64,000 nucleotides of DNA from Leucoraja ocellata (lineage: Eukaryota): contig JAWMAR010002394.1 in NCBI GenBank assembly GCA_036785375.1, positions 1-64,000 on the forward strand, in the 5' to 3' direction. Every line of letters begins with the position of its first letter. Within the stretch, counting starts at the first letter, position 1. Both the position numbers and the translations under genes were made by a program. Below the pieces are notes generated by a model. It was not told the origin of the DNA. It ran no database searches and was given only the letters and a program-made list of their open reading frames with translations. This document shows positions 1 to 48,529 of this stretch, one piece after another.

Positions 1-112
1 TCCATCGAAATCACTGACCTCAAAATGAACGATACAGGAAGGTATTACTGCCGAGTGAGTGTTTTCACAGGGGAAACATATAATGGTCACGGCACAGATG
101 TCACGGTCACAC
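1..112 (+). CDS. 3' part of Ig V(J)-type domain exon of receptor gene A (5' part lies outside the window)
   Basis: Frame 1 reads SIEITDLKMNDTGRYYCRVSVFTGETYNGHGTDVTVT: D-x-G-x-Y-Y-C F-strand and J-like GxGT motif. Phase-1 donor C|GTAAGT at 112/113. Near-identical to 30110-30221. Confidence 0.9.
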
Positions 113-569
113 GTAAGTTTACAGAACCTTAACTTTATCTTTACTGTTCTTAACATTCTTAATCCGACTGCACTTGCCTTTGTGTGTCGGAGGGAACTGC
201 AGACACAAAAACTGGAGAAACTCAGCGGGACAGGCAGCATCTCTGGAGAGAAGGAATGTGTGACGTTTTGGGTCGAGACCCTTCTTCAGACTGGTTAGGG
301 ATAAGGGAAACGAGAGATATAGGCGATGATATAGAGAGATATAACGAATGACAGAATGACATATATGCAAAGGGTGTCAGGAGTCAGGACTCAAATTAGT
401 TTTATTGTCATGATTGTCTGAGAAAAGTAACCATGATAAAGGAAACATGCCATTATTCGCTGTTTGTTGTGTGATAACGAGAAGCTGGTGCTACTTGGGT
501 GGGGGTGGGGGGGGGGGGGTGGTGGTGGTGGGGGGGGGGGGGGGGGGGGATAGAGAGAGAGAGAGAGAG

Positions 570-1770
570 GCTGCCGAAATTACTTGAAGTGAGAGAAATC
601 AATATTCATACCACTGGGGTGTAAACTGCCCAAACCAAATATGAGATGCTGCTCCTCCAATTTGCATTTAGCCTCAATCTGACAATGGAGGAGACCGAGG
701 ACAGAAAGGTCTGTGTGGGAATGGGGAGGATAATTAAAGTGTTCAGTAACTGGGAGATCAGGTTGGTGCAGGCGGTCTGAGCCAAGGTGTTTAGCGAAAC
801 GATCGCCCAGTCTGCGTTTGGTCTCGCCGATGTGTTAGAGTTCACATCTGGAACAACGGATACAGTAGATGAGGTTGGAGGAGCAGCAAGTGAACCTCTG
901 CCTCACCTGAAAGGACTGTTGGGGTCCCTGGACAGAGTTGAGGGAGGATGTATTAGAAACATAGAAACATAGATAATAGTTGCAGGAGTAGGCCATTCGG
1001 CCCTTCGAGCCTGCACCGCCATTCAATATGATCATGGCTGATCATCCAACTCAGTATCCTGCACCTGCCTTCTCTCCATACCCCCTGATCCCTTTAGGCA
1101 CAAGGCCCACATCTAACTCCGTCTTAAATATAGCCAACGAACTGGCCTCAACTACCTTCTGTGCCAGAGAATTCCACAGATTCACCACTCTCTGTGTGAA
1201 AAATGTTTTCTTCATCTCGGTCCTAAAAGATTTCCCCCTTATCCTTAAACTGTGACTCCCTTGTTATGGACTTCCCCAACATCGGGAACAATCTTCTTGC
1301 ATCTAGCCTGTCCAACGCCTTAAGAATTTTGAAAGTTTCTTTAAGATCCCCCCTCAATCTTCTAAATTCTAGCGAGTACAAACCGATTCTATCCAGTCTT
1401 TCTTCATACGAAAGTCCTGACATCCCAGAAATCAATCTGGTGAACCTTCTCTGTACTCCCTCCATGGCAAAAATGTATTTCCTCACATTAGAAGACCAAA
1501 GCTGTACGCAATACTCCAGGTGTGATCTCACCAAGACCTTGTACAACTGCAGTAGAACCTCCCTGCTGCTATACTCAAATCCTTTTGCTATGAATGCTAA
1601 CTTACCATTCGCCTTCTCCGGTGAGGACCGGTGTTGCATCTTCTGCGGTTGCTGGGGAAGGTACCTGGAGAAGGGGTGGTCTGGGTGGGAAGGGATGAGT
1701 TGACCAGTTAGTTGAGGAGGGAACGGTCTCTGAGGAGGGAAGCAAAAAGGGGTGGAGATGGGTAAATGTG
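570..1770 (-). mobile_element. Penelope-like element fragment, interrupted by a CR1 3' fragment (~955-1618)
   Basis: Minus-strand QSFQVRQRFTCCSSNLIYCIRCSRC matches the GIY-YIG region at 55669-56382. The CR1 insert (RT C-terminus ORF 1223-1639) is absent from the paralogous copy at 30280-30810. Confidence 0.8.
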
Positions 1771-2501
1771 AGGAACTCCAGATGCTGGTTTAGACCGAAG
1801 ATAGCTGGAGTAACTCAGCGGGACAGGCAGCATCTCTGGAGAGAAGGAATGGGTGACGTTTCGGGTGGAGACCCATTCATCATCTTGACCATCTTCTGCT
1901 TTGATCTGTCTTTTTCACACCTCACGTGCTCTTTGTACCCTTCCATATCTCTAGTCTCCCTGTCCCCAGACTCTCAGTCTGCGGAGAGGAAGTTGAAACG
2001 CCCAACTCCAGTACCAAGTCTGTTGAGCTTCACCCATGCTCCTCTGGGTAGGTCAGACCCTGGACAGGTTTTGTCTGGTGAACAGATGGAGCTGTGTAAT
2101 GGAGATGAGGTTGCCTTCCACTCCTGTGACCACTTGGTGGCTATCCAGTGTGCTTTTGTCTCCGTTGGCTGGATTGATGCTAGGAGTTGTTTAAGGATGT
2201 TAATTGCCTGTCAGGACGCGCGTCCTTGGGTTGAGAGAGGAAGCAATAACGCCCAGGGGAAACGCAGGCAATATAATGGAGAACGTGCAAACTCCACACA
2301 GACAGACAGCACCCGGGGTCAGGATCGAACCCGCGTTGTCTCACGACATTTAAAAGGCGTCTCGCCAAGCATTTGAAACGCTGAGACATAGAAAGGCCAT
2401 GATCCTAACGCGAGTAAATGGGATTGTGTAGATAGGTGTAATGGATGGCATTGACAGGGTCGGCCGAAAGGCCAGCGCCGAGACTATAATATTATTTCAA
2501 G

Positions 2502-2611
2502 TTGATGAATCGACCATACAATCACCGAATCTGATCATAGTTACTGAAGGCGGGACTGTGCGGATAAACTGTACATTTGTTGGCACCACAATCAGTTCAA
2601 TTGGGCACTAA
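2502..2611 (+). pseudogene. Truncated V-exon fragment broken by a CR1 3' fragment
   Basis: DESTIQSPNLIIVTEGGTVRINCTFVGTTISSI, then LINE sequence and TAA at 2609-2611. Upstream 2260-2500 is homologous to the intron before the V exon at 29898. Confidence 0.85.
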
Positions 2612-3601
2612 GATGAGGAAAACCTTTTTCACCCAGAGAGTTGTGAATCTGTGGAATTCTCAGCGTCATAAGGCAGTGGAGGCCGGTTCTCTGGATGCTT
2701 TCAAGAGAGAGTTAGATAGAGATTTAAAGAGAGCGGAGTCAATGGATATGGGGAGAAGGCAGGAACGGGGCACTGATTGTGAATGATCAGCCATGATCAC
2801 AGTGAATGGCGGTGCTGGCTCGAAGGGCCGAATGGCCTCCTCCTGCACCTATTGTCTATTGTCTATTGCCGACACCGGCCAACAATGTCCCAGCTACACT
2901 AGTCCCACCTGCCTGCGCCTGGTCAATATCCCACAAAACCTGTCCTATCCATGTACCTGTCCAACTGCTTCTTAAACCATGGGATAGTCCCAGCCCCAAC
3001 GACCTCTGGCAGCTTGCTCCATACACCGACTATTCTTTCCATCGAAGCGCAATCCAGTTCCTCCTTAATTCACATGCACGCTCCGCTCACTCCGACTCCT
3101 CCATATATCAGGGGTAAATTACACCTGTTCATTACCTATCAGGACGCACGTCTTTGGGATGAGAGAGGAAGCAGTAACGCCCAGGGGAAACACAGGGAAT
3201 AACACGGAGAACGTGCAAACTCCACACCGGCAGTCAGCATTGAGGCCGGGATACTGGCCCTCAGAGGCAGCAGCTGCTTCGGCTATTCCCTCAAGCAATC
3301 AAGGTGGAGATAAAAGGAACAGCAGATGCGGGGTTACAAACAAAAAGACGGAAAGTGCTGGAGTAACTCAGCGGTCAAGGCAGCATCTGTGGAGAACATG
3401 GATAGGTGACATTGTGGAATGCTGAAGAAGGGTGCCGACCTGAAATGTCGCCTATACACGGGGTTTGGAGATTGCAACCTTCACGTGGCCCGCCCTGTTT
3501 CGACGAATGCAATCAACCTGGTGTGCACAATCAAACAAGATCAAATAGAACAAGTTGTCCAACAACTTTGGGCAATGCACGCCATACGCAAGAAGAGGAA
3601 T

Positions 3602-3852
3602 CCTATACATGTTCTCCACAGATGCTGCCTGACCCGCTGAGTTACTCCAGCACTCTGTGAAACGTCACCTATCCATGTTCTCCACAGATGCTGCCTGACC
3701 CGCTGAGTTACTCCAGCACTCTGTGAAACGTCACCTATCCATGTTCTCCACAGATGCTGCCTGACCCGCTGAGTTACTCCAGCACTCTGTGAAACGTCAC
3801 CTATCCATGTTCTCCACAGATGCTGCCTAACCCGCTGAGTTACTCCAGCACT
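3602..3852. repeat. 66-bp tandem array (Penelope-terminal-repeat derived), ~4 units
   Basis: Unit aacgtcacctatccatgttctccacagatgctgcctgacccgctgagttactccagcactctgtga; 22-aa periodicity in ORF 3541-3876. Similar arrays at 9620-9920, 44440-44610 (inverted) and 46675-46990. Confidence 0.9.
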
Positions 3853-4021
3853 TTGAATTCTATGCAAGATTCCCACATCTGTTGTTACTGTTCAGGCAAC
3901 TGAAGTGTGGGAATTTGTCTACGTTTACAATGACAGTGGGAACATCTCGGTGTATAAGAATGGAAGGAAACAGAAAGAAAATGGGAAAGTAATTGGTGAA
4001 CTTGATGTTTTATTCCTTCAG

Positions 4022-4179
4022 GCCGGATCTCTGTAGAAATCCCTGCATGGGGATTACGTTGGCAGCTGGTGGTAATGGGAGTGAAACTTGCAACGTTCAT
4101 TGTGATCAACGTTATAATAGTTTTCATCATCCGCTCATGGGAGTCTTGTGGATTTGCCAGCCGGACAAAAGAAGCCTAA
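4022..4179 (+). CDS. Transmembrane + short cytoplasmic exon with TM lysine (activating-type receptor, gene A)
   Basis: Acceptor ttttattccttcAG|GC at 4021/4022 is phase 1, compatible with the V exon ending at 112. Reads RISVEIPAWGLRWQLVVMGVKLATFIVINVIIVFIIRSWESCGFASRTKEA* (Lys codon 4084-4086). Donor G|GTAAGA at 4194/4195 just after the stop. Frame intact in three copies. Confidence 0.8.
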
Positions 4180-4307
4180 CAGGCTGGTCAAACGGTAAGA
4201 GGATTGCCAGCGCCATGTGTGGGTTGTATTAGCAGCTGAGGTCACTGGACAATGGTGAATTTTATTGTCACCTGCGTGGTGCTACCACAGTGAAAATATT
4301 GTCCTTA

Positions 4308-4585
4308 CAAACTAAACTAAACTAAACTAAACTCAACTCAACTAAAATAAAATAAAATACTCTAAACGAAACTAAACGAAACTAAACTTAACCAAATCAA
4401 ACTAAACAAAATTCAACTAACCTAAACTAAAATAAACCTAACAAAATTTAAACAAACGAATCCAAAGCAAAGCAAACTAAACTAAACTAAACTAAACTAA
4501 ACCATACCAAACTAAACTAAACTAAACTGAACTAAACTAAACTAAACTAAACTAAACTTAAATTAACTTAAATTAACAACTAAAC
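4308..4585. repeat. Degenerate (AACTA)n microsatellite
   Basis: Seen directly. Paralogues at 10375-10520 and 47447-47780; another at 43392-43490. Confidence 0.95.
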
Positions 4586-4614
4586 TACTCTGAAATACAT
4601 TCAGTTCCATTGAA

Positions 4615-4760
4615 ATCCCGCACTCCCTTGGCCACGCTCTCATTTCACTCCTACCATCAAGTGGAAGATATCTGAGTCTGAAAACCGTGACCACAAGGTT
4701 CAAGAACAGCTTCTTCCCTGCAACTATCAGGCTCTTGAACATCACAGAAGACTAGGCTCA
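4615..4760 (+). mobile_element. Rex1/Babar-like LINE 3' fragment
   Basis: Reads LLPSSGRYLSLKTVTTRFKNSFFP, typical of the Rex1/Babar RT C-terminus. Copies at ~10680-10810 and ~47800-47940. Confidence 0.55.
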
Positions 4761-5336
4761 ACTATGAACATGAATGGACTTCCTTGTGTTGCACCAAGGA
4801 TCTTGTATTTTCGTGTTTGCACCAGATACACATTTATTGTTGGTTTTGTTTATTATATTTTATCTAAGTGTGTTGTATGTACAGGCCGGTTACGCTGCTG
4901 CCAGTAAGAATTCCATTGTCCGGTTGTCGGTACAACAAACTTAGATAAAATATAATCAACAAAACCAACAACAAATTTGTAACTAGTGCAAACCCTCTTG
5001 AATCTTGCAACGTAGACTTACTGCAACATAACAAAGGCGACATGGCAGGGAAAACTAGACCGAACCTGGCCAGAAATAAGGAGCTCATCCAGGACTTGGA
5101 TGGTACATGGATAGGTGGGTTTAGTGTAGCTGAGACATGTTGGCCGGTGCGGGGAGTGTGGGCCATAAGATCCTGTTTCCACGCTGTATCACTCCATGAC
5201 TCTATGACTAGGAGCTTTGTGGACACATACTTGACAAGAACTTTAATAACAATAATGTAGTCAATTGTGTTCAATGCTATTAATGTTTTTGCGCCTGTAC
5301 ATGTGATATAATAAAATATCTATTTTATTTTCACAG

Positions 5337-5520
5337 ACCATAAGTGTTGAACTCCCTACATATTTGAATCAACTCATCCAACAGATCAAACCATGAAAAG
5401 CAAACTCATTACTGAATCAACATTAGCTCAGTCAGCTGTGCTGATACTGTTGTGGACCATTTGGGATAATGTAATTTGTGAAATCTTACACTCATTAAAA
5501 CTCCACATTGCCTTCTTGTT
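5337..5520 (+). other. Putative terminal 3'UTR exon of gene A
   Basis: Acceptor tattttattttcacAG (5335-5336), ATTAAA at 5494-5499, T/GT-rich tract downstream. Conserved at 16038 and 48530. Confidence 0.5.
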
Positions 5521-5579
5521 TGTTCGTTCCTGACAACAACAGATTCAAGTCAGAGTAGTTACATTTCAAACGCAGACCA

Positions 5580-5925
5580 TTAGACAATAGACAATAGACA
5601 ATATTTGGTCTACAGTGTACAAGCCCAGCCGCTCCATTCTCTCAGCATATAACAGTCCCACCATCCCGGGAATTGACCTTGTAAAACTACGCTGCACTCC
5701 CTCAATAGCAAGAATGTCCTTCCTCAAATAAGGGGACCAAAACTGCGGATAATACTCCAGGTGTGGTCTCACTAGGGCCCTGTAAAACTGCAGAAGGTCC
5801 TCTTTGCTCCTATACTCACCTCCTCTTGTTATAAGGGCCAACATGCCATTCGCTTTCTTCACTGCCTGCTGCACCTGCATGCCCACTTTCATTGACTGAT
5901 GAACAAGGACCCCCCCCAGATCCTG
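5580..5925 (-). mobile_element. CR1-clade LINE 3' fragment
   Basis: ORF 5566-5982 [15 protein letters not shown]; (TAGACAA)n tail. Confidence 0.85.
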
Positions 5926-7074
5926 CTGCACCTCCCCAAGCGGCGATACCCTGTGAAGAAGCGTTTTCACCGGAAACATCACCCATTCCTTTTCTCCAGA
6001 GATGCTGCCTGACCCGCGGAGTTACTCCAGCTTTTTGTATCTATTTTCGGACAGTCCTCTTGTGTTCCATTTGCCTGATGGATCTCCCGGTTTCAAACCA
6101 TTTTAACTCTCCTTCCCATTCCCACACCGACCCCTCTGCCCTGAGTCTCCTCCATTGCCTGAGTGAGGCCATTGGAGAAACTGGACCTCATTCTCCATCT
6201 CGGTAGCTTAGAACCCAATATTGAACTGTGAATTTTCTAATGTCAGATCACGCCAGTTCAGGCGACAGTTCGAGCTCGACAAACGAATCATCGACACCAA
6301 GGTGTCTCGGCCACAAGATGGTGCCACAATGGTGTGATTTGACAGAGATTGTTACAGGTTGTAATAATAGACCAATAAGGACACTTTGTTAATAGGATCT
6401 TGTTCATGTTCTTTATATAATGACAACAATTTATCGCTGAATGATGTGCGCTGGAAAGTTATTAAAAGTCCTGCTGTATCCGAAACTGTAATAAGTCTCA
6501 TCTGTTACACGGATGTCCATTCTACCGGTAAATACACGTATGTGTCTCATAAGGTCATAAGGTCATAAGGTCATAAGTGATAGGAGCAGAATTAGGCCAT
6601 TTGGTCCATTAAGTCTACTCCACCATTCAATCATGGCTGATCTATATTTCCCTCCTAACCCCATTCTCCTGCCTTCTCCCCATTCCTCTAACACCTGTAC
6701 TAATCAATAATCTATCTATCTTTGCCTTACAAATATCCACTGACTTGGCCTCAACAACCTTCTGTGGCCAATAATTCCACAGATTCACCACCCTCTGACT
6801 AAATAAATTCCTCCCCATCTAGAACCTCATTTAATTCTGAGGCTATGACCTCGAGTCCTAGACCCTCTCGTTAGTGAAATAATCCTCTCCACATCCACTC
6901 TATCCAAGCCTTTCACTTTTCAGTAAATTTCAATAAGATATCCTCTCATCCTTCTAAATTCATGCTGGTACAGGCCCAGTGCCGTCAAACGCTCATCATA
7001 TGTTAACCCACTCAATCCTGGGATCATTCTTGTAAATCTCCTCTGGGCCCCTACAGCACTTTCAGCGGCAGAAT

Positions 7075-7308
7075 CGCAGGTTCGATCCCGACTACGGGTA
7101 CTGTCTGTACGGAGTTTGTTCGTCCTGTTGTCTCCGAGATCATCAGTTAAATCCACACTCCAAAGACATACAGGTTTGTAGGTTAACTGGCTCAGTATAT
7201 ATGTAAATTGTCCTTAGTGTGTGCAGTGTAGTGTTAAAGTGCGGGGATCGCTGGTCGGTACGGACACGATGGGCCGAATGGCCTGTTTCCGCGTTGTATC
7301 TCCAAAAC
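7075..7308 (+). mobile_element. tRNA-derived V-SINE copy
   Basis: B-box-like GGTTCGATCCC, V-domain-like core (ctgtctgtacggagtttg...cacactccaaagac), 3' end gggccgaatggcctgtttccgcgttgtatctc. Confidence 0.7.
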
Positions 7309-7309
7309 A

Positions 7310-9340: not shown

Positions 9341-10088
9341 AACTGAACTAAACTGATCTAAACTGAACGAAACTGCACGAAACTAAACATTATTGAATCT
9401 CGGAATAGGTGACGTTTCGAGTGAGAACACTTATTCAGACTTTGTGTCTATTTTTGTAAACCAGCATTTGCAGTTCCTTGTTTCTACAATATATACAGTT
9501 GGTTCTGCTATAACTTGACATCTGTTTCTTAAAGCAACCTCGCCATTATGACAATTGGAAACGAGGGTTTGATCTCGAGTGTTTCTGAAATTAACGCTTA
9601 ACCCCCAGACAATTCTCCATAATTGCTGCCTGACCCGCTGACTTACTCCAGCATTCTGTGAAACGTCACCTATCCATGTTCTCCACATATGCTGCCTGAC
9701 CCGCTGAGTTACTCCAGCACTCTGTGAAACGTCACCTATCCATGTTCTCCACAGATGCTGCCTGACCCGCTGAGTTACCCCAGCACTCTGTGAAACGTCA
9801 CCTATCCATGTTCACCACAGATGCTGCCTGACCCGCTGACTTACTCCTGCACTCTGTGAAACGTAACCTATCCATGTTATCCACAGATGCTGCCTGACCC
9901 GCTGAGTTACTCCAGCACATTAAATTCCGTGCAAGATTCAAACATCTCTTGTTACTGTTCAGGCAACTGAAGTGTGCGAATTGGTCTACGTTTACAATGA
10001 CAGTGGGAACATCTCGGTGTATAAGAATGGAAGGAGACAGAAAGAAACTGGGAAAGTAATTGGTGAACTTGATGTTTTATTCCTACAG

Positions 10089-10246
10089 GCCGGATCCCTG
10101 TAGAAAGCCCTGCATGGGGATTACGTTGGCAGCTGCTGGTAATGGGAGTGAAACTTGCAACGTTCATTGTGATCAACGTTATAATAGTTTTCATCATTCG
10201 CTCATGGGAGTCTTGTGGATTTGCCAGCCGGACAAAAGAAGCCTAA
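10089..10246 (+). CDS. Second copy of TM-Lys exon (no V exon of its own seen upstream)
   Basis: Acceptor tattcctacAG at 10087-10088; RIPVESPAWGLRWQLLVMGVKLATFIVINVIIVFIIRSWESCGFASRTKEA*; donor GTAAGA at 10262. Confidence 0.65.
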
Positions 10247-11237
10247 CAGGCTGGTCAAACGGTAAGAGGATTGCCAGCGCCACGTGTGGGTTGTATTAGC
10301 AGCTGAGGTCACTGGACAATGGTGCATTTTATTGTCACTTACGAGGTGCCACCACAGTGAAAATATTTCCTTACAAACTAAACTAAACTAAACTCAACTC
10401 AACTAAACTAAAATAAAATACTCTAAACGAAACTAAACGAAACTAAACTTAACCAAACCAAACTAAACAAAATTCAACTTACCTAAACTAAAATAAACGT
10501 AACTAAATTTAAACAAACGNNNNNNNNNNNNNNNNNNNNNNNNNNNNNNNNNNNNNNNNNNNNNNNNNNNNNNNNNNNNNNNNNNNNNNNNNNNNNNNNN
10601 NNNNNNNNNNNNNNNNNNNNNNNNNNNNNNNNNNNNNNNNNNNNNNNNNNNNNAACTAATCTTCAATACATTCAGTTCCATTGAAATCCCGCACTACCTT
10701 GGCCACGCTCTCATTACACTCCTACCATCAAATAGAAGATATCTGAGTCTGAAAACCGTGACCACAAGGTTCAAGAACAGCTTCTTCCCTGCAACTATCA
10801 GGCTCTTGAACATCACAGAAGACTAGGCTCAACTATGGACATGAATTGATTTCCTTGTGTTGCACCAAGGATCTAGTATTTTCGTGTTTGCACCAGATAC
10901 AAATTTATTGTTGGTTTTGTTTATTATATTTTATCTAAGTGTGTTGTATGTACAGCCCTGTCACGCTGCTGCCAGTAAGAATTCCATTGTACAGTTGGCG
11001 GTACAACAAACTGAGATAAAATATAATCAACAAAACCAACAACAAATTTGTAACTAGTGCAAACCCTCTTGAATCTTGCAACGTAGACTTACTGCAACAT
11101 AACAAAGGCGACCTGGCAGGGAAAACTAGACCGAACCTGGCCAGAAATAAGGAGCGCATACAGGACTTGGATGGTACCTGGATAGGACATGCTTGGAGGG
11201 ATATAGGCAGGTGGGTTTAGTGTAGCTGGGACATGTT

Positions 11238-29089: not shown

Positions 29090-29127
29090 ATGCAGTGGAG
29101 TGTGGTCGCTTGGTCCGTTCTGCTATT
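29090..29127 (+). CDS. Signal-peptide exon of receptor gene B (runs into N-gap)
   Basis: Acceptor ttgtttccgcctcAG at 29074-29075; aagATG at 29090; MQWSVVAWSVLL hydrophobic leader ~800 bp upstream of the V exon. Donor presumably in gap 29128-29317. Confidence 0.7.
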
Positions 29128-29897: not shown

Positions 29898-30221
29898 GTG
29901 CTGTTGGATCCGATGAATCGATCATACAATCACCGAAGCAAATCACAGTTACTGAAGGCGGGACTGTGCGGCTAAACTGTGCAGTTGTTGGCAACACAAT
30001 TGGGGCCATTAGTTGGTACAAAGACGTGGAAACTCGTGCCGTTTCCAACACGAGCGGCGACTATTATGGCCGCGTTCTGAAATATAATTCACCGGGGATT
30101 CTAAAAGAATCCATCGACATCACTGACCTCAACATGAACGAGACAGGAAGGTATTACTGCCGATGGAGTGCTTTCTCAGGTGAAATATATAATGGTCACG
30201 GCACAGATGTCACGGTCACAC
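29898..30221 (+). CDS. Ig V(J)-type domain exon of receptor gene B (NKp30/SIRP-like)
   Basis: Acceptor ttctggtttcAG|GT, phase 1. Reads GAVGSDESIIQSPKQITVTEGGTVRLNCAVVGNTIGAISWYKDVETRAVSNTSGDYYGRVLKYNSPGILKESIDITDLNMNETGRYYCRWSAFSGEIYNGHGTDVTVT, with canonical Cys, Trp, YYC and GxGT. Donor C|GTAAGT. Confidence 0.93.
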
Positions 30222-30279
30222 GTAAGTTTGCAGAACCTTAACTTTATCTTTACGGGGGATAGAGAGAGAGAGAGAGAGG

Positions 30280-30810: not shown

Positions 30811-31199
30811 GAGGAACTCCAGATGCTGGTTTAGACCGAAGATAGCTGGAGTAACTCAGCGGGACAGGCAGCATCTCTGGAGAGAAGGAATGGGTGACGT
30901 TTCGGGTGGAGACCCATTCATCATCTTCAGCATCTTCTGCTTTGATCTGTCTTTTTCACACGTCACGTGCTCTTTGTACCCTTCCATATCTCTAGTCTTC
31001 CTCTCACAAGACTCTCAGTCTGGAGAGAAGTCCCATCTTCAGACACAACCAAACTCACCGCACCCGTAGCAAAGAGCACGTGTCCCCAGGTGGGGAGGGC
31101 AGACCCTGGACACGTGCTCTTTGTACGGGTGACGTTTCGGGTTGTGTCTGAAGAGGGGACCCTTCTTTAGGCTGAGAGTCAGGAGAGAGGGATATGGAA

Positions 31200-32310: not shown

Positions 32311-32436
32311 CGCCTGTTCCGAGCGGCAAGGGTGGAACTTATAACATTCCGCTTGTGTGTGGACTCTCGGGTGTGGCGTTGCTCGGGATGGTACTGATTC
32401 TCATCATTTACCTGCGACGCCGCGGTCGATCTCCAG
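32311..32436 (+). CDS. Stalk + uncharged transmembrane exon of gene B
   Basis: Acceptor ttttgtttctcaacAG; 126 bp, phase 1-1. Reads PPVPSGKGGTYNIPLVCGLSGVALLGMVLILIIYLRRRGRSP with a basic stop-transfer segment. Donor CAG|GTAACA. Confidence 0.88.
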
Positions 32437-34947: not shown

Positions 34948-34979
34948 ATAAAGGAACCGGAACAGAAGATGAGGCTACG
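34948..34979 (+). CDS. 32-bp cytoplasmic micro-exon of gene B
   Basis: Acceptor tgtattacAG, donor ACG|GTATGT. Phase 1 to 0 exactly bridges the TM exon and last exon; DKGTGTEDEAT. Confidence 0.7.
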
Positions 34980-35059
34980 GTATGTAGTTAATTAACCTTT
35001 AGATGTTCCCTCTGACTTGATCAGTGGTTATTTGCCATTTTGTGTTTCTTTGTGAATTA

Positions 35060-37673: not shown

Positions 37674-37959
37674 GAAAATGACACATCGAAAAATATAATC
37701 TATGCTGACCTGAATATCAAAAAGTTGAACAGTAATCACCGTTCGGGTCAAGATGCCAGAGGGAATGGGGCTCGGGTCAAAAACCCCGGCGGGGCCGGAC
37801 CTCTGTCCGAGGCAGGTGGAAGGGAAGACCCGGTTCAGAAATCCCGCTCAGACGGACAATCCAGCATCGAACAAGCAGAAGAAGGATCGCATAAGAAATG
37901 AACAACAGGTTGTGTACGCAACCGTGAATGCTCAGCGTCCACCAGTTCCCCAACACTGA
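37674..37959 (+). CDS. Terminal cytoplasmic exon of gene B with ITIM(s); apparent +1 frameshift between motifs
   Basis: Acceptor gttacattccAG|GAA, phase 0. ENDTSKNIIYADLNIKK (ITIM 37695-37712), stop ending at 37901. The +1 frame, open 37729-37959, ends RNEQQVVYATVNAQRPPVPQH* (ITIM 37909-37926). Confidence 0.82.
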
Positions 37960-38743: not shown

Positions 38744-38749
38744 AATAAA
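38744..38749 (+). promoter_or_regulatory. Candidate polyadenylation signal of gene B
   Basis: AATAAA in non-repeat AT-rich sequence ~800 bp after the stop. Confidence 0.4.
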
Positions 38750-39003
38750 GTTTTGGAATGATATCACACCGAGTATTTAATATCGACGTCTGATTTCCTT
38801 CCGCCTTTACGCCAATTGACTCCAACATTCTCCCCGTGACCGCGTGAGTTTCTCCGAGATCTTCTGTTTCCCTCCCATACTCCACGGATGTACAGGTATG
38901 TAGGTTAATTGGCTTGTAGTATGTGTGAATTGTCCCTGGTGTGTGTGTGTGGTCATATTGAATGTCGGTGCTGGCCTCGAAGGGCGAATGGCCTACTCCT
39001 GCC

Positions 39004-42000
39004 TAAAGATCCTAGAGGAGCAAGATAGACCACTCCTCGAAAAACGCGTAGTATGACGTGTGTGATCGTGGACGCCATTTTTCGAGGCATTTATTGGGTT
39101 CCCCACACTGTCATGGCGTCCTTATCTAAATTTCATCTCACTGCTCTGCTATCAAGTATTCTAATCGTAAATCTAAACCACCCGACCTGTCATTTTTAGG
39201 TTCCCCAATAAAAAAGAAAGGTGAGAAAATATTTTTATTATTTTCAGTCGATATTCTGTCGTGAAAATGTTATTTTCTGTTCTCCCATCAACGGCCATTG
39301 GGAAAATGGGTTTGTCGGTACATTAGAAAGTTATTAGACTTATTTTTATAGTTCTTTACTCACCACAATAATAAAGACAATTTTAACACTTCTGTACGTT
39401 TTTGGTTTTGTTCTTGTAAGGGATTGGTCTCCACAATATGGCCCGCGGACACATCAGCTCCAGTGACCAGGAGATTTTTCGAGCTCAGATTCAAGTGCGA
39501 GAATGGGCGGCTGTTACCCATTATATTCCTCGAACATAGGGACATAGCAAACAACACTCACATACATACAAGACATCACAAGCAAAGATCACAAGCGCGC
39601 CGTGAAGAAGGGTGCAATCAAATATTATATAACTCTGCTCTATCATCTTTGGGTGCAATGGTGGGTCGGGGGGTTCGGTGGCGGCGGCCGCAATCAAGAT
39701 ACTAGTGGAGCTCTGCTCTATAATCTTTGGTCGGAATGGGACGGCTGCGCGTTATAATGTGCTATCGTTCCACTCTCCCTCTCCCCCTTCTCCCTCTCCC
39801 CTTCTCCTCCCCCCTTCTCCTGTCCCCCCCCCCTTTCCCCTTCTCCCTCCCCTTCTCCCTCTCCCCTTCTCCCTCTCCCCCTTCTCCCTCTCCCCCTTCT
39901 CCCTCTCTTCTCTCGANNNNNNNNNNNNNNNNNNNNNNNNNNNNNNNNNNNNNNNNNNNNNNNNNNNNNNNNNNNNNNNNNNNNNNNNNNNNNNNNNNNN
40001 NNNNNNNNNNNNNNNNNNNNNNNNNNNNNNNNNNNNNNNNNNNNNNNNNNCCTCTTCGTGAGAGGTGGCAGCTCTGCTATGCCTTGGGTCCAAAAGAGGA
40101 TAGATAGAAAATACTTAATGGGCTTTGTAAGAAGATTTTAATAAGCTCTTCTACATTTAAGGTAAATTGACATATAGATGGCAAAACGCATTTTCAATAT
40201 ACAGGTCTCCACACAACTGAAAACAATTGCATTAAGTGATATATCATCCATTGTCCAGGCAAGTAGCACTAGTTACAATAAACTTCCTACATATTCCAGG
40301 AATTCTTATCATAAAAATGGGAGAGGCTTAAATGCATTGTAAAATCATAAATCCATGTTGACTTGGACTAATCCTTTTACAGCTATCCAAATGCCCCATT
40401 ATTACATCTTGAATAATTGACTCCAGCATCTTTCACACCACCAAAGTCAGGCTAACTGGTCTGTAATTCCCCAATTTCTCTCTCGCTCCTTTCTTGAAAA
40501 GTGGGATAGCATTAGCTATCCTCCAATCTCACAGGAACTGGTCGTAAATCTATTGATCGTTGGAAAATAATAGAAACATAGAAACAAGAAATTGGGTGCA
40601 GGAGTAGGCCATTCGGCCCTTCGAGCCTACACCGCCATTCAATATGATCATGGCTGATCATCCAACTCAGTATCCCGTACCTGCCTTCTCTCCATACCCC
40701 TGATCCCCTTAGCCACAAGGGCCACATCTAAACTCACTCTTAAATATAGCCAATGAACTGGCCTCGACTACCCTCTGCGGCAGAGAGTTCCAGAGATTCA
40801 CCACTCTCTGTGTGAAAAAGGTTCTTCTCATCTCGGTTTTAAAGGATTTCCCCCTTATCCTTAAGCTGTGACCCCTTGTCCTGGACTTCCCCAACATCGG
40901 GAGAAATCTTCCTGCATCTAGTCTGTCCAACCCCTTAAGAATTTTGTAAGTTTCTATAAGATCCCCTCTCAATCTCCTAAATTCTGGAGAGTATAAACCA
41001 AGTGTATCCAGTCTTTCTTCATAAGACAGTCCTGACATCCCAGGAATCAGTCTGGTGAACCTCCTCTGCACCCCTCTATGGCAATAATGTCCTTCCTCAG
41101 ATTTGGAGGACCAAAACTGTACGCAATACTCCAGGTGTGGTCTCACCAAGACCCTGTACAACTGCAGTAGAAACTCTCTGCTCCTATACTCAAGTCCTTT
41201 CGCTATGAAAGCTAACATACCATTCGCTTTCTTCACTGCCTGCTGCACCTGCACGCCTACTTTCAATGACTGGTGTACAATGACATAGAAAAAAAAACAT
41301 AGAAACATAGAAAGTAGGTGCGAGAGTAGACCACCAGGTCCGTCGAGCCCGCACCGCCATTCGCTCATGGCTGAACACTAAACAGACACACTTACCCACA
41401 AACAGTAGACACAAGACACAGAACACAAGACACTACCCTCCCCTTTATACCGCTATCACCCCTCTCCACCCAAGAACCTCGTGATCTCCTGGGGGAGGCA
41501 AAAAACCGGATAAAAACCCAGGTCCAATTCGGGAAAAAAATCCGGGAAATTCCTCTCCGACCCCAATCCAGGCGATCGACACTTGTCCAGGAGATCACTC
41601 AGGTCTTACTATACTAACCATACCTAGGTCCATTATCCCTGCCCTCTCCCCCGTAGCCCCTTATCCCCTTGGCAGCTAAAAAACCATCTATTTTAGTCTT
41701 AAATATATTTAAAGTTTCTGCTTCCACTGCTCCCTGGGGCAGTGAATTCCATAAATTAACCACCCTCTGGGTGAAGAAGTTCTTCCTCATCTCAGTTTTA
41801 AAAGAGCCCCCTCTTATTCTGCAACTATGTCCCTAGTTCTAGTTTCCCCGATCATTGGGAACATCCTCGGTGCATCCACCCGATCAAGGCCCCTCACGAT
41901 CTTATATGTTTCAATGAGGTCGCCTCTCATTCTTCTAAACTCCAAAGAGTAGAGTTCCAGCCTACTTAACCTTTCCTCATATGTCAATCCCCTCATTGCA

Positions 42001-43270
42001 GGAATTAATCTGTAAACCTTCGCTGCACTGCCTCCAGGGCTAGTACATCCTTTCTTAAGTATGGACCCCAGAACTGTACATAGTATTCCAAATGTGGTCT
42101 CACTAAATGACACCCAGGTCTCGCTGCATCTCCCCTTTTCCTAGTCGGCCGCCATTTAGATAATAGTCTGCTTTCCTGTTTTTGCCACCAAAATGGATAA
42201 CCTCACATTTATCCACATTATACTGCATCTGCCAAACATTTGCCACTCACCCAGCCTATCCAAGTCACCTTGCAGTCTCCTATGCATCCTCCTCACAGCT
42301 AACACTGCCCCCCAGCTTAGTGTCATCCGCAAACTTGGAGATATTGCCTTCAATTCCCTCATCCAGATCATTAATATATATTGTAAATAGCTGGGGTCCC
42401 AGCACTGAGCCTTGCGGTACCCCACTAGTCACTGCCTGCCTAATGAAGAACTCAACCATATATGGTCACTCTAGCCAAGGGGGCACGTACAACAAGATTG
42501 CTAACTAACCCTTCCTCATTACTCAATACCCAGTCTAAAATAGCCTGCTCTCTCGTTGGTTCCTCTACATGTGAATCATATGTATAAATATATATGCATG
42601 TATGTGTATATATATATGTATATGTGTGTATATATGTATGTATATATATGTTTATATGTGTGTATGTATGCATATAAATGTATCCATATGNNNNNNNNNN
42701 NNNNNNNNNNNNNNNNNNNNNNNNNNNNNNNNNNNNNNNNNNNNNNNNNNNNNNNNNNNNNNNNNNNNNNNNNNNNNNNNNNNNNNNNNNNNNNNNNNNN
42801 NNNNNNNNNNNNNNNNNNNNNNNNNNNNNNNNNNNNNNNNNCCTTTATGGTTTATGTATATCATCTTACAAGACAAATAAATTAATAGTGATTATTTAAA
42901 TCAAATTTGCTTCTGATCCATGAGAATCAACTTAACTATCTCTAACTTGCCTCTCACACACAGACACACATTCATATAAATATATATAATATGTATACGT
43001 AAATTAATTTTGTACAGTGTGTGTTAAAGCAATACAATGCAAGGGAAACTACGCAAAGGAGGGGCTGTTCCCGCTACAGATACTCGAGGATCTTTGCTTT
43101 GGATCAAAGATTATAGCGGAGCTCTAAAATCTTTGCTTTGGATCACAGCGGGTGGCATACCGGAAGTCGCGTGGCGCATTGAAAATGGCGGCCGTGACGT
43201 TCCGTCACGTACTACACGCCAGTCCATTGGATTCGAAGGAGTGGTCTATCTTGCTCCTCTAGGATCTTTG
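39004..43270. mobile_element. Non-autonomous TIR DNA transposon with 8-bp TSD (hAT or P superfamily), carrying nested CR1s
   Basis: TIR (T/C)AAAGATCCTAGAGGAGCAAGATAGACCACTCC at both ends. TSD CTCCTGCC at 38996-39003 and 43271-43278. Splits a CR1 3' tail. Confidence 0.8.
40570..42570 (-). mobile_element. CR1 fragment with a second CR1 subfamily nested at ~41286-42105
   Basis: RT ORFs 40709-41368, 41814-42113, 42156-42425; TSD AATGACA at 41279-41285 and 42106-42112. Confidence 0.8.
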
Positions 43271-43544
43271 CTCCTGCCCTATTTTTCTACGTGTCTATGT
43301 TTTTCTATGTGTAGGATGGGATGGTGTTAATGTGTGCGGGTATCGCTGGTCGGCATATGTGGGTCAAAGGCATTTTTCCGCGCTGTATCTCTAAACTAAA
43401 CAAAACTAAACTAAACTAAACTAAACGAAACTAAACTAAACTAAACTGAATTAAACTAAACTAAACTAAACGAAACTAAACTAAACTAAACACAAGACGT
43501 GATTAATTTACTACTTAGTCAGCGTTGAAGGTAAATTAAGATTT

Positions 43545-43807
43545 AGTTTAGAGACACAGCGCGGAAACAGGCCCTTCGGCCCACCGGGTCCGCGCCGACC
43601 AGCGATCCCCGCACACTAACACTATCCTACACCCACTAGGGACAATTTTCACATTTACCCCAAGCCAATTTATCAATAAACCTGCACGCCTTTGGAGTGT
43701 GGGAGGAAACCGAATTTCTCGGAGAAAATCAACGCAGGTCACGGGGAGAAGGGGCAAACCTCCGTACAGACAGCACCCCGTAGTCGGGATCGAACCCGGG
43801 TCTCTGG
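43545..43807 (-). mobile_element. V-SINE copy (5' end in gap)
   Basis: Reverse complement has GGTTCGATCCCGACTACGG, the V-domain core and an actaa tail. Other copies near 29510-29725, 33640-33780, 38005-38250. Confidence 0.75.
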
Positions 43808-45342
43808 NNNNNNNNNNNNNNNNNNNNNNNNNNNNNNNNNNNNNNNNNNNNNNNNNNNNNNNNNNNNNNNNNNNNNNNNNNNNNNNNNNNNNNNNNNNNN
43901 NNNNNNNNNNNNNNNNNNNNNNNNNNNNNNNNNNNNNNNNNNNNNNNNNNNNNNNNNNNNNNNNNNNNNNNNNNNNNNNNNNNNNNNNNNNNNNNNNNNN
44001 NNNNNNNGTGGTTGTTCAGGATAATAGATCGTCTGATCACAGCTGGACAAGCGTGTGGCATCATGTTTCAGCAGTGTGTCTCAGTCTTTGATCGCTTGAT
44101 CTAACAGAGACGGAGCCATGATGTTGATGAATGAAGATATATTGGCAACATAATCCAGTGTGATGGGATTATCACCCTCGTCAGTAAACTGTGGTCTGAG
44201 CGGCTAATACCAGCATTGGGTTGCCAAGTGAAAGACTCCATATGTTGAGTCCACGTGATGGGGTGATGTGTGGCCCTCAACCAAACCACCTGGTCACAAC
44301 ATTCCTACATTGACAGAAACACCACTCTGGTCAACTCAAACATAGCCCCTCATTGAATGATCCAGCATGGAAACAGGCCCTTCGGCCCAACTAGCCCAAA
44401 ACGGCCAACATGCCCCATCTACACTTCATCTAAATATAGAATGCTGGAGTGACTCAGCGGGTCAGGCAGCATCTGTGGAGAACATGGATAGGTGACGTTT
44501 CACAGAGTGCTGGAGTAACTCAGCGGGTCAGCAGCATCTGTGGAGAACATGGATAGGTGACGTTTCACAGAGTGCTGGAGTAACTCAGCGGGTCAGGCAG
44601 CATCTGTGGAGCTAAGGAAATAGGCAACGTTTCGGGTCGAAACCCTTCCGGGTTTCGGCCCGAAACGTTGCCTATTTCCTGAAGGGTTTTGGCCCGAAAC
44701 GTTGCTATTTCCTTCGCTCCATAGATGCTGCTGCACCATAACTCAGCAGGTCAGGCAACATCTGTGGAGAACATGGATAGGTGACGTTTCACAGAGTGCT
44801 GGAGTAACTCAGCGGGTCAGGCAGCATCTGCTGGAGAGAATGGATGGTGACGTTTCGGGTGGAGACCCATTCATCATCTTGAGCATCTTCTGCTTTGATC
44901 TGTCTTTTTCACACCTCGCGTGCTCTTTGTACCCTTCCATATCTCTAGTCTTCCTCTCCCCAGACTCTCAGTCTGCGGAGAGGAAGTTGAAGCGCCCAAC
45001 TCCAGTACCAAGTCTGTTGAGCTTCACCCACGCTCCTCTGGGGAGGTCAGACCATGGACAGGTTTGATCTGGTGAACAGATGGAGCTGTGTAATGGAGAT
45101 CAGGTTGCCTTCCACTCCTGTGACCACTTGGTGGCTATCCAGTATGCTTTTGTCTCCGTTGGCTGGATGGATGCTAGGAGTTGTTTAGGGATGTTAATTG
45201 CCTGTCAGGACGCGCGTCCTTGGGTTGAGAGAGGAAGCAAGAACGCCCAGGGGAAACGCAGGCAATATAATGGAGAACGTGCAAACTCCACACAGACAGA
45301 CAGCACCCGGGGCCAGCGCCGAGACTATAATATGTTTTCAAG

Positions 45343-45440
45343 TTGATGAATCGATCATACAATCACCGAATCAGATCATAGTTACTGAAGGCGGGACTGT
45401 GCCGCTAAACTGTGCATTTGTTAGCAACACAGTCAGTTAA
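45343..45440 (+). pseudogene. Truncated V-exon fragment, copy 2
   Basis: DESIIQSPNQIIVTEGGTVPLNCAFVSNTVS*, then the same CR1 junction as at ~2603. Confidence 0.85.
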
Positions 45441-46236: not shown

Positions 46237-46420
46237 AGGTTACACAAAAAAGCTGGAGAAACTCAGCGGGTGCAGCAGCATTTATGGAGCGAAGGAAATA
46301 GGCAACGTTTCGGGCCGAAACCCCAGTCTGAAGAAGGGTTTCGGCCCGAAACGTTGCCTATTTCCTTCGCTCCATAGATGCTGCTGCACCCGCTGAGTTT
46401 CTCCAGCTTTTTTGTGTAAC
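46237..46420. repeat. Long inverted repeat of a Penelope terminal segment containing a hammerhead motif
   Basis: ~85-bp arms (ggttacacaaaaagctggagaaactcag...ctccagcttttttgtgtaacc) around CTGAAGAAGGGTTTCGGCCCGAAACGTT. Confidence 0.8.
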
Positions 46421-47157
46421 CTTCGATTCTCCAGCATCTGCAGTTCCTTCTTAAACTCTGTGGAGAACATGGATAGGTGACATTGTGGAATGCTGAAGAA
46501 GGGTGCCGACCTGAAATGTCGCCTATACACGGGGTTTGGAGATTGCAAACCTTCACGTGGTCCGCCCTGTTTCGACGAATGCAATCAACCTGGTGTGCAC
46601 AATCAAATAAGATCAAATAGAACAAGTTGTGCAACAACTTTGGGCAATGCACGCCATACGCAAGAAGAGGAATCCTATCCAAGTTCTCCACAGATGCTGC
46701 CTGACCCACTGAGTTACTCCAGCTCTCTGTGGGACGTCACCTATCCATGTTCTCCACAGATGCTGCCTGACCCACTGAGCTACTCCAGCACTCTGTGAAA
46801 CGTCACCTATCCATGTTCTCCACAGATGCTGCCTGACCCGCTGAGTTACTCCAGCACTCTGTGAAACGTCACCTATCCATGTTCTCCACAGATGCTGCCT
46901 GACCTGTTGACTTACTCCAACACTGTGAAACGTCACCTATCCATGTTATCCACAGATGCTGCCTGACCTGCTGAGTTACTCCAGCACTTTGAATTCTATG
47001 CAAGATTCCCACATCTGTTGTTACTGTTCAGGCAACTGAAATGTGCGAATTGGTCTACGTTTACAATGACAGTGGGAACATCTCGGTGTATAAGAATGGA
47101 AGGAGACAGAAAGAACCTGGGAAAGTAATTGGTGAACTTGATGTTTTATTCCTTCAG

Positions 47158-47315
47158 GTCGGATCCCTGTAGAAAGCCCTGCATGGGGATTACGTTGGCA
47201 GCTGGTGGTAATGGGAGTGAAACTTGCAACGTTCATTGTGATCAACGTTATAATAGTTTTCATCATCCGCTCATGGGAGTCTTGTGGATTTGCCAGCCCG
47301 ACAAAAGAAGCCTAA
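47158..47315 (+). CDS. Third copy of TM-Lys exon
   Basis: Acceptor tattccttcAG 47156-47157; RIPVESPAWGLRWQLVVMGVKLATFIVINVIIVFIIRSWESCGFASPTKEA*; donor GTAAGA at 47331. Confidence 0.7.
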
Positions 47316-48529
47316 CAGGCTGGTCAAACGGTAAGAGGATTGCCAGCGCCATGTGTTAGTTGTATTAGCAGCTGAGGTCACTGGACAATGGTGCATTTTA
47401 TTGTCACCTGCGAGGTGCTACCACAGTGAAAATATTTCCTTACAATCTAAACTAAACTAAACTAAACTAAACTAAACTAAACTAAACTAAACTAAACTAA
47501 ACTAAACTAAACTAAACTAAAACAAACTTATCTAAATTTAAACAAACGAATCCAAAGCATAACAAACAAAACTAAACTAAACTAAATTAACCTAAACTAA
47601 ACAAAGAAACGAAACTAAAATGAGCTAAACTAAACAGAAATAGTCTAAACGAAACGAAACTTAACTAAACTAAGCTTAACTTAACTTAACTAAACAAAAA
47701 CAAACTTAACTAAACTTAACCAAACCGAACCAAACAACATTAAACGAATCTAAACTAAACTTAAATTAACAACTAAACGAATCTTCAATACATTCAGTTC
47801 CATTGAAATCCCGCACTCCCTTGGTCACGCTCTCATTACACTCCTACCATCAAGTAGAATAAATCTGAGTCTGAAAACCGTGACCACAAGGTTCAAGAAC
47901 AGTTTCTTCCCTGCAACTATCAGGCTCTTGAACACCACAGAAGACTAGGCTCAACTATGAACATGAATGGACTTCCTTGTGTTGCACCAAGGATCTTGTA
48001 TTTTCGTGTTTGCACCAGATACACATTTATTGTTGATTTTGTTTATTATATTTTGTCTAAGTGTGTTGTATGTACAGCCCTGTTACGCTGCTGCCAGTAA
48101 GAATTCCATTGTACAGTTGTCGGTACAACAAACTTAGATAAAATATAATCAACAAAACCAACAACAAATTTGTAACTAGTGCAAACCCTCTTGAATCTTG
48201 TAACGTAGACTTACTGCAACATAACAAAGGCGACCTGGCAGGGAAAACTAGACCGAACCTGGCCAGAAATAAGGAGCTCATCCAGGACTTGGATGGTACA
48301 TGGATAGGTGGGTTTAGTGTAGCTGAGACATGTTGGCCGGTGTGGGGAGTGTGGGCCATAAGATCCTGTTTCCACGCTGTATCACTCTATGACTCTATGA
48401 CTAGGAGCTATGTGGACACATACTTGACAAGAACTTTAATAACAATAATATAGTCAATTGTGTTCAATGCTATTAATGTTTTTGTGCCTGTACATGTGGT
48501 ATAATAATATATCTATTTTATTTTCACAG

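What the first reader, a model, noticed from the sequence alone, without database searches (positions are those of the whole stretch)
1..47331. Candidate paired activating/inhibitory single-IgV receptor family in a probable cartilaginous fish
Seen: two near-identical V exons (ending 112 and 30221) are each followed by a phase-compatible but unrelated TM module. One has a TM lysine (VVMGVKLATFIVINVIIVFII) and a 15-aa tyrosine-free tail. The other has an uncharged TM and ITIM-bearing tail. Established: this is the architecture of paired immune receptors (SIRPa/SIRPb1, KIR, CD300, PILR), where TM Lys pairs with the ITAM adaptor DAP12 and ITIMs recruit SHP-1/2. Inference: a lineage-specific, recently duplicated paired-receptor system. 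The activating exon is easy to miss because the ORF track shows it only in wrong frames.
Basis: partly seen in the sequence, partly recalled or inferred. Interest (0 to 1): 0.92.

Follow-up and report, generated by a model that had tools for sequence, protein, structure and literature searches.

The report
Skate paired activating/inhibitory VJ-type receptor genes
This stretch of a skate-like genome holds a small cluster of single-domain immune receptor genes, one wired to switch cells off and others apparently wired to switch them on; it is a real but fairly ordinary kind of immune gene family, still unnamed in these fish.

Summary
The sequence features are as described. V exons end at 112 and 30221. 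A Lys-bearing TM/short-tail exon starts at 4022. An uncharged TM exon and an ITIM exon follow V2.

New here:
- The Lys-TM exon occurs three times (4022, 10089, 47158) inside 93-95% identical segmental duplications.
- Truncated V relics lie 1.4-1.7 kb upstream of two of them, at 2504 and 45345.
- The inhibitory tail is frameshifted relative to its skate homologue and keeps only one ITIM.
- The leader of the inhibitory gene runs into the gap at 29128.

The strongest support is external. The only real hit of the Lys-TM exon among 1.84 billion proteins is a RefSeq model of the skate Rhinoraja longicauda. That model joins leader, V and Lys-TM at the predicted junction. The locus with the next number is the ITIM form.

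RNA reads cover the V and Lys-TM exons on the sense strand at low depth, but they carry paralogue variants. The 112>4022 joint was not among the 15 of 3814 joints shown.

Verdict: a real paired VJ-type receptor family, a new member of a known kind. Splicing and function at this locus are unproven. Other notes of this scan cover the same stretch and a further unit beyond the window.

The parts
1..112 (+). 3' part of V exon 1 (gene A). The window starts inside the exon. It ends ..YYCRVSVFTGETYNGHGTDVTVT + 1 nt, with donor gtaagt.
1804..1993 (+). Single copy of a high-copy repeat. Here unit 1 switches from gene-B-like sequence (5') to sequence like that upstream of S3 (3'). This is the proposed recombination joint.
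   Evidence: RNA depth above 1000 in this bin
2504..2602 (+). Relic V exon fragment (codons about 5-37). It is 18 nt shorter at its 5' edge, which removes the acceptor, and it is cut off by a repeat insertion.
4022..4195 (+). Lys-TM exon, copy S1. Coding runs to the stop at 4177-4179; a conserved donor acg|gtaaga lies at 4195/4196.
10089..10262 (+). Lys-TM exon, copy S2 (RIPVESPAWGLRWQLLVMGVK...). The RNA reads of run X15 carry this copy's three variants.
29090..29127 (+). Start of the leader exon of gene B (MQWSVVAWSVLL), which runs into the gap at 29128-29317.
29898..30221 (+). V exon 2 (gene B), whole, phase 1 at both ends, a VJ-type V-set domain.
30845..31031 (+). Upstream copy of the repeat that brackets the inhibitory cassette.
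32311..32436 (+). Stalk plus uncharged TM exon of gene B.
34948..34979 (+). Short cytoplasmic exon (D-KGTGTEDEAT).
37674..37901 (+). Last coding exon with ITIM I-I-Y-A-D-L. As assembled, the stop is at 37899-37901.
37837..37959 (+). The ancestral tail frame, now out of frame (+1). It still reads ..QQVVYATVNAQRPPVPQH-stop and is homologous to the C-terminus of P0004.
44798..44987 (+). Downstream copy of the bracketing repeat.
45345..45434 (+). Second relic V fragment, with the same 18-nt loss and the same truncation point as the one at 2504.
47158..47331 (+). Lys-TM exon, copy S3.

Best explanation
The window holds part of a tandem cluster of non-rearranging, VJ-type, single-V immune receptor genes of a skate-like fish. 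The family comes in two wirings.

Gene B (leader 29090, V 29898-30221, TM 32311, tail exons 34948 and 37674) is the inhibitory form. After ligand binding its ITIM tyrosine would be phosphorylated and recruit SHP-type phosphatases. That step is inferred.

The Lys-TM exon (4022, 10089, 47158) is the activating module. It has a short tail without signalling motifs, and a membrane Lys (with conserved Thr and Asn). The Lys would pair with the Asp of an ITAM adaptor dimer of the DAP12 / FcR-gamma / CD3-zeta type. That step is also inferred.

Gene A is V1 spliced to a Lys-TM exon. It most likely arose when recombination between two copies of a dispersed repeat deleted the inhibitory cassette (31031 to 44798 in gene B coordinates). 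That put an intact V exon in front of a Lys-TM exon whose own V exon was already dead.

Shown: the sequence architecture, the homology and the cross-species gene models. Inferred: splicing at this locus, the adaptor, the phosphatase and the ligand.
For: - Exon edges, phases and motifs were read directly.
- V-set domain, E 2e-10. The best full-length PDB matches are TCR-alpha, light-chain-type, nanobody and SIRP-alpha V domains, aligned through the J motif.
- The Lys-TM exon has 1 real hit of 3 among 1.84e9 proteins. It is P0001 (XP_078271940.1, R. longicauda, 196 aa), made of leader + V + Lys-TM, with 34 of 44 identical and K, T and N kept.
- P0004 (LOC144602684, same contig) has V + uncharged TM + IIYADL / VVYSAL / IVYATV.
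- Both models are collinear with the window's exons.
- The Lys-TM core is better conserved between species than the inhibitory TM. BLASTP aligns 44 aa at 77% for the former and only 10 aa for the latter.
- The Lys exon diverges less than its flanks: 4 of 174 mismatches against 5.1%, binomial P 0.054. Acceptor and donor are kept in 3 of 3 copies.
- Stranded RNA run X15 gives depth 8.65 on V (bin 1-200) and 4.06 on the Lys exon (bin 4001-4200). Both are on the same strand. Depth is 0.19 in the next bin.
- Three-way alignment shows unit 1 as gene-B-like on the 5' side and like the sequence upstream of S3 on the 3' side. The switch lies inside the shared repeat.
- Both V relics share the same 18-nt loss and the same truncation point.
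Against: - No junction read was seen. The joint table listed 15 of 3814 joints, none of them 112>4022.
- In X15, 0 of 11 reads over 55/56/62 carry V1's letters, and 4 of 4 reads at 4040 and 4069 carry S2-type letters. The transcripts may therefore come from paralogues elsewhere.
- Runs X8 and X12 give at most a few reads on these exons.
- The skate proteins are automatic RefSeq models, and their RNA support is unknown to me.
- Gene B's tail is frameshifted against P0004 and loses two of three Tyr motifs. It may be decaying, or the assembly may be wrong there.
- The leader donor lies in a gap.
- One diagnostic site in the recombination alignment (column 157) disagrees with a single switch.
- The exon-versus-flank constraint is only marginal (P about 0.05).
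- One paper states that the FcR gamma chain appeared with bony fish (PMC4016189, passages). The adaptor in skates is therefore open.
Confidence: 0.6

Rival explanations
1. At this locus the Lys-TM exons are relics. Their own V exons were destroyed, gene A is an accidental deletion product that is not expressed, and the RNA reads come from intact activating genes elsewhere in the genome. The family is still paired, but this window shows only an inhibitory gene plus debris.
For: - V relics lie upstream of 2 of 3 Lys exons.
- 0 of 11 X15 reads match V1 at its diagnostic sites.
- The three copies differ by only 2-3%, so an intact frame is expected by chance alone.
- The locus is heavily invaded by LINEs and other repeats.
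Against: - The exon is somewhat less diverged than its flanks.
- Splice sites are intact in 3 of 3 copies.
- The X15 reads carry exactly the three variants of S2, which lies in this window.
- One read each in X8 and X12 keeps V1's letters.
Confidence: 0.2
2. There is one gene with two endings. V2 is spliced either to the inhibitory exons or, skipping them, to the Lys-TM exon at 47158. A single V domain then gives both an inhibitory and an activating isoform.
For: - The Lys exon at 47158 lies downstream of gene B on the same strand.
- It is phase-compatible with V2.
- It has no intact V exon of its own.
Against: - Four assembly gaps lie between V2 and this exon (35832, 39917, 42691, 43808), so adjacency rests on scaffolding.
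- In R. longicauda the two forms are separate loci.
- The intron would be 17 kb and would cross a terminal exon.
- No read evidence was obtained for this region.
Confidence: 0.1
3. The Lys form is not an adaptor-coupled activator. It could be a signalling-dead decoy or co-receptor, with the membrane Lys serving assembly with some other partner, or retention.
For: - No adaptor gene was seen or tested here.
- The tail has no motif.
- The Lys sits in the outer third of the predicted helix, residue 7 of the 19-residue hydrophobic core LVVMGVKLATFIVINVIIV.
Against: - K, T and N of the helix are kept between two skate species while neighbouring residues vary. That is the pattern expected for a polar membrane contact.
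- In every well-studied paired family, a basic TM residue plus a short tail means adaptor coupling. This rests on established knowledge, recalled.
Confidence: 0.1

Closest known systems
Shark NCR3 / NKp30 family (Flajnik et al. 2012; Kinlein et al. 2021). Neither paper could be read here; their content is recalled. The accession range MT914154-914161 for the NCR3 genes was seen in passages of PMC12227049.
   Same: A non-rearranging single VJ-type V domain followed directly by a TM. It is a multigene family in an elasmobranch. The mammalian member has a basic TM residue and a short tail (recalled).
   Different: No NKp30 chain is among the best 60 PDB matches, either of V2 (60 of 3142) or of the family profile (60 of 2267); TCR and Ig V domains score higher. 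MHC linkage could not be tested. The basic residue here is Lys, where human NKp30 has Arg (recalled). Whether the shark NCR3 subtypes include ITIM forms is not known to me.
NITRs of ray-finned fishes
   Same: V domains with a J-like motif. Clustered multigene families with inhibitory (ITIM) forms and activating forms that carry a charged TM residue and couple to Dap12 (bioRxiv 10.1101/2021.06.11.448072, passages).
   Different: NITRs typically have a second I-type domain (same preprint), whereas this family has one V only. The preprint reports no evidence of NITR homologues in cartilaginous fishes. Sequence relatedness was not tested here.
MDIRs of the clearnose skate
   Same: A multigene family of activating and inhibitory Ig receptors in a skate (PMC3031540, passages).
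   Different: MDIR V domains are of the CD300 / TREM / pIgR type (same paper). V2 has only the two canonical Cys and a J motif.
Mammalian paired receptors (SIRP-alpha/beta, PILR, CD300, KIR)
   Same: Linked genes with similar ectodomains. One has ITIMs; the other has a membrane Lys and a short tail.
   Different: The similarity is in working principle only. SIRP has extra C1 domains and KIR has C2-type domains. No orthology is implied. SIRP-alpha V is a moderate PDB match (E 8e-6).
R. longicauda LOC144602683 / LOC144602684 (RefSeq, 'uncharacterized protein')
   Same: True family members: V 71-73% identical, Lys-TM 77%, and the same junctions and tail motifs.
   Different: They are another species or paralogues. 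Both carry an extra S-T-A-V-T-V-T stretch after V. The activating model reads on past the window's stop, and the inhibitory model keeps all three Tyr motifs.

Membership tests
Paired activating/inhibitory IgSF receptors (a class defined by how it works) | Linked genes with closely similar ectodomains | tested here: met
   V1 and V2 are 30 kb apart on one strand, with 103 of 112 nt and 30 of 37 aa identical over the part of V1 in the window.
Paired activating/inhibitory IgSF receptors (a class defined by how it works) | One form with a basic residue in the TM and a short tail without Tyr motifs | tested here: met
   LVVMGVKLATFIVINVIIV is the hydrophobic core, followed by a 15-aa tail without Tyr, in 3 of 3 copies.
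Paired activating/inhibitory IgSF receptors (a class defined by how it works) | The other form with an uncharged TM and ITIM(s) | tested here: met
   I-I-Y-A-D-L in the 37674 exon. The second and third motifs of the homologue P0004 are lost or out of frame here.
Paired activating/inhibitory IgSF receptors (a class defined by how it works) | The V exon is really spliced to the Lys-TM exon | tested here: inconclusive
   The RefSeq model P0001 joins them at the homologous point. In the reads the joint is not among the 15 of 3814 joints listed.
Paired activating/inhibitory IgSF receptors (a class defined by how it works) | Binding of an ITAM adaptor and of SHP phosphatases | not testable with these tools
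   This needs co-expression and pull-down experiments.
NCR3 / NKp30 | Non-rearranging VJ-type single V domain | tested here: met
   The V and J-like motif lie in one exon, with no break after Y-Y-C. PDB alignments run through the J motif.
NCR3 / NKp30 | Specific sequence relatedness to NKp30 V domains | tested here: inconclusive
   NKp30 is absent from the 60 best of 3142 matches and the 60 best of 2267 matches.
NCR3 / NKp30 | Linkage to the MHC | not testable with these tools
   The window holds only this family and repeats.
NITR | V domain with a J motif, plus activating (charged TM) and inhibitory (ITIM) forms in clusters | tested here: met
   The definition is taken from passages of bioRxiv 10.1101/2021.06.11.448072.
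NITR | Typical second, membrane-proximal I-type domain | tested here: not met
   There is no Ig exon between V and TM in the window, or in P0001 and P0004.
CD300 / TREM / MDIR-type receptors | V domain with an extra cysteine pair and no J motif (feature recalled) | tested here: not met
   V2 has two Cys only (N-C and Y-Y-C) and ends in a G-x-G-T-x-V-T-V motif.
SIRP / UrIg | V followed by C1-type constant domains | tested here: not met
   V is followed directly by the stalk and TM. UrIg is described as VJ-C1 in PMC10751288 (passages).

The most novel reading that the evidence does not exclude
This locus may have caught the birth of an activating receptor in the act. An older activating neighbour lost its own V exon to an 18-nt deletion and a repeat insertion. 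Recombination between two dispersed-repeat copies then deleted the whole inhibitory cassette of a duplicated unit. That placed an intact, fast-diverging V exon directly in front of the orphan Lys-TM exon. If so, repeats drive the switching of inhibitory receptors to activating ones in a VJ-type family. Such a family would be the cartilaginous-fish counterpart of the NITR / NKp30 receptors.
Probability: 0.35. Interest if true: 0.6.

Novelty: new member of a known kind. Interest (0 to 1): 0.45.

Why it matters
Paired receptors are a recurring solution in vertebrate innate immunity, and they are thought to evolve under pressure from pathogens. Cartilaginous fishes are the oldest lineage with human-type adaptive immunity, and their NK-type receptors are poorly known.

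A VJ-type family with both wirings in skates adds a data point on two questions:
- How old this design is.
- Whether NITR- or NKp30-like receptors predate bony fishes. The holostean preprint names this as open.

It also implies that skates have an ITAM adaptor with a membrane Asp. The locus gives a concrete, testable example of how a repeat-mediated deletion can turn an inhibitory gene into an activating one.

Tried and rejected
- **V2 alone in the search for homologous proteins.** Blank. The tool sees only proteins of 59-187 aa, so this says nothing; the family member found later is 196 aa.
- **P0001 and P0004 as queries.** Each found only these two proteins (2 of 2240 and 2 of 225 candidates). 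No other annotated member is in that collection.
- **P0002 and P0003.** Repeat-built proteins that match only the I-S-x-x-x-P-A-W-G stretch. Rejected as chance.
- **Reads.** The output was dominated by repeats.
- **pN/pS of V1 against V2.** 2.3 but not significant (Fisher P 0.68). The exon is more diverged than the introns (9 of 112 against 29 of 788, P 0.043). This is suggestive only.
- **NKp30 membership.** Could not be settled.
- **CD28-family membership.** Rejected. The CDR3 P-P-P type motifs described in PMC11599192 (passages) are absent from V2.
- **Pfam on the three TM and tail exons.** Nothing above cut-off.
- **Searches for prior description.** Searches found no paper on this family in skates. 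Kinlein 2021, Flajnik 2012 and Ohta & Flajnik 2015 are not held. I opened no supplementary files, and those of PMC11599192 and PMC12227049 might list related chondrichthyan genes.
- **Spliced model.** Exons were searched apart.

Full report
**Observation.**
The named features are all in the sequence. V1 ends at 112 and V2 spans 29898-30221. Both end ..G-H-G-T-D-V-T-V-T plus one base before gtaagt. V2 is a V-set domain (E 2e-10) with its J-like strand in the same exon.

The exon at 4022 follows an 'ag' acceptor. In the phase left by V it encodes a stalk, a hydrophobic core LVVMGVKLATFIVINVIIV and a 15-residue tail without Tyr, with the stop at 4177-4179. Exons 32311-32436, 34948-34979 and 37674-37901 have proper splice sites and compatible phases. 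They give an uncharged TM and an I-I-Y-A-D-L ITIM.

'Near-identical' is generous. Over the 112 nt of V1 inside the window, 9 nt and 7 of 37 residues differ from V2.

**Gaps, tested first.**
- Gene A's parts (1-10519) lie on one gap-free stretch. So do V2, the inhibitory TM exon and the 34948 exon (29318-35831).
- The gap at 10520-10653 is collinear with both paralogous copies.
- The gap at 29128-29317 cuts the leader exon of gene B. Its reading M-Q-W-S-V-V-A-W-S-V-L-L starts at 29090 and runs into the N run, so the end of the leader and its donor are unread.
- The gap at 35832-36068 lies in the last intron. The exon order across it agrees with the skate protein P0004.
- The three gaps between 39917 and 44007 cannot be checked. 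They matter only for the adjacency of gene B to the third Lys-TM copy.
- Nothing was filled in.

- A self-comparison and tblastn show three Lys-TM exons: 4022-4195, 10089-10262 and 47158-47331. They lie inside segments S1, S2 and S3, which are 93-95% identical.
- Acceptor, frame, stop and a donor acg|gtaaga are kept in 3 of 3 copies.
- The exon is less diverged than its flanks: 4 of 174 mismatches against 5.1%, binomial P 0.054.
- About 1.4-1.7 kb upstream of S1 and S3 lie V fragments, at 2504-2602 and 45345-45434. Both lack the same 18 nt, including the acceptor, and both stop at the same repeat insertion. These are dead V exons.
- Their upstream sequence is 87% identical to that upstream of V2.

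**External evidence.**
The 51-residue Lys exon was searched against 1.84 billion proteins and gave three hits. Two are repeat artefacts. The third is P0001 (E 3e-11). P0001 is XP_078271940.1, 'uncharacterized protein LOC144602683' of the skate Rhinoraja longicauda.

P0001 has 196 residues: a leader M-Q-W-G-V-V-A-W.., a V domain 71-73% identical to V2, and a Lys-TM segment with 34 of 44 residues identical, including K, T and N.

Searching with P0001 found one more protein, P0004 (LOC144602684, same 41.49 Mb contig).

**The inhibitory tail.**
Against P0004, the window's last exon matches in one frame up to 37835 and in the +1 frame from 37837. The middle Tyr motif is missing, and the last one (V-V-Y-A-T-V, 37909-37926) is out of frame. 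As assembled, gene B keeps one ITIM. This may be real decay or an assembly error.

**Reads.**
One call was allowed (window 1-6000, four runs). X1 is DNA-like: a contig runs collinearly across the intron-exon edge at 4021/4022.

In the stranded RNA run X15, depth with the first mate on the minus strand was 8.65 in bin 1-200, 3.58 in 2401-2600, 4.06 in 4001-4200 and 0.19 in 4201-4400. Depth on the other strand was 0.29 in bin 1-200 and 0 in the other three bins. The V and Lys-TM exons are therefore transcribed in sense, and coverage stops near the donor at 4195.

However, 11 of 11 reads over 55/56/62 differ from V1. Also, 3 of 3 reads at 4030 and 4 of 4 reads at 4040 and 4069 carry the S2-type letters (one search lists these). 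X8 and X12 gave only a few reads on these exons. The joint table showed 15 of 3814 joints, all in repeats. Expression is therefore shown for the family, not for gene A, and splicing is not shown.

**History.**
Unit 1 is collinear with gene B from the V exon to 31031, and with the region upstream of S3 from 44798 on. In a three-way alignment, unit 1 is identical to gene B on the left and follows the S3-upstream copy on the right. The switch lies inside a shared high-copy repeat, and one site disagrees.

The simplest reading has four steps:
1. An old tandem pair of an inhibitory and an activating gene.
2. Loss of the activating gene's V exon.
3. Duplication of the whole unit, with 4-5% divergence since.
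4. Deletion of the inhibitory cassette in one copy by recombination between repeats.

The V exon is more diverged than the introns (8.0% against 3.7%, P 0.043), with 7 non-synonymous and 1 synonymous codon changes. The pN/pS ratio is not significant.

**Comparison with known families.**
The V domain is of the antigen-receptor-like VJ kind. Its best PDB matches are TCR-alpha, light-chain-type, nanobody, NAR and SIRP-alpha V domains.

- It works like NITRs, NKp30, SIRP-beta and PILR-beta.
- It is not CD300/MDIR-type: it has two Cys only and a J motif.
- It is not SIRP or UrIg: it has no C domains.
- It is not a typical NITR: it has no I domain.

Membership of the shark NCR3/NKp30 family is open. 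NKp30 is not among the listed PDB matches, MHC linkage cannot be tested, and the key paper (Kinlein 2021) is not held. I recall only its abstract, which reports eight divergent nurse shark NCR3 subtypes.

Papers seen as passages only:
- PMC3031540 (MDIR).
- PMC11599192 (the VJ set and CD28 motifs).
- PMC10751288 and PMC12227049 (NKp30 and UrIg as non-rearranging VJ genes; NCR3 accession numbers).
- bioRxiv 10.1101/2021.06.11.448072 (NITR definition; no evidence of homologues in cartilaginous fishes).

**Limits.**

**Verdict.**
This is a real, coherent paired VJ-type receptor family in a skate-like genome. It is a new, unnamed member of a well-known kind. Function and locus-specific splicing are unproven. 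Interest is moderate.

Noticed in passing
window 16581-19679 (-) and 59398-62482 (+): Two inverted LINE copies are 98.6% identical. The + copy has an intact 737-aa ORF (58460-60673) with GDSL-esterase and endonuclease domains, followed by a reverse transcriptase ORF. The element looks recently active.
   Followed up: partly
window 57673-58208: A tandem array with an 82-bp period and 100% identical copies lies just upstream of the LINE ORF.
   Followed up: no
window 3602-3852, 9613-9918, 46674-46993; inverted copy at 44438-44611: 66-bp tandem repeats head each Lys-TM segment. RNA read depth there is above 1000 in all three RNA runs, so this is a high-copy transcribed repeat.
   Followed up: no
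window 37835-37837: Gene B's tail changes frame relative to the R. longicauda homologue and lacks the middle Tyr motif. This is either a real truncating change or an assembly indel.
   Followed up: partly
window 55, 56, 62: All 11 X15 reads over these sites carry T, G, G. That matches neither V1 nor V2 exactly (V2 has C at the site matching 62). A third V paralogue is therefore the one expressed in that sample.
   Followed up: no
window 4195/4196, 10262/10263, 47331/47332: A conserved donor-like acg|gtaaga lies 16 nt after the stop of each Lys-TM exon, and read depth drops there. The exon may be internal, with a 3'-UTR exon further on. The R. longicauda model instead reads on through this site.
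   Followed up: partly
window 492-577 and 4302-4579: A long poly-G run and an (aactaaact)n-type microsatellite. The reads tool skipped both as repeats.
   Followed up: no
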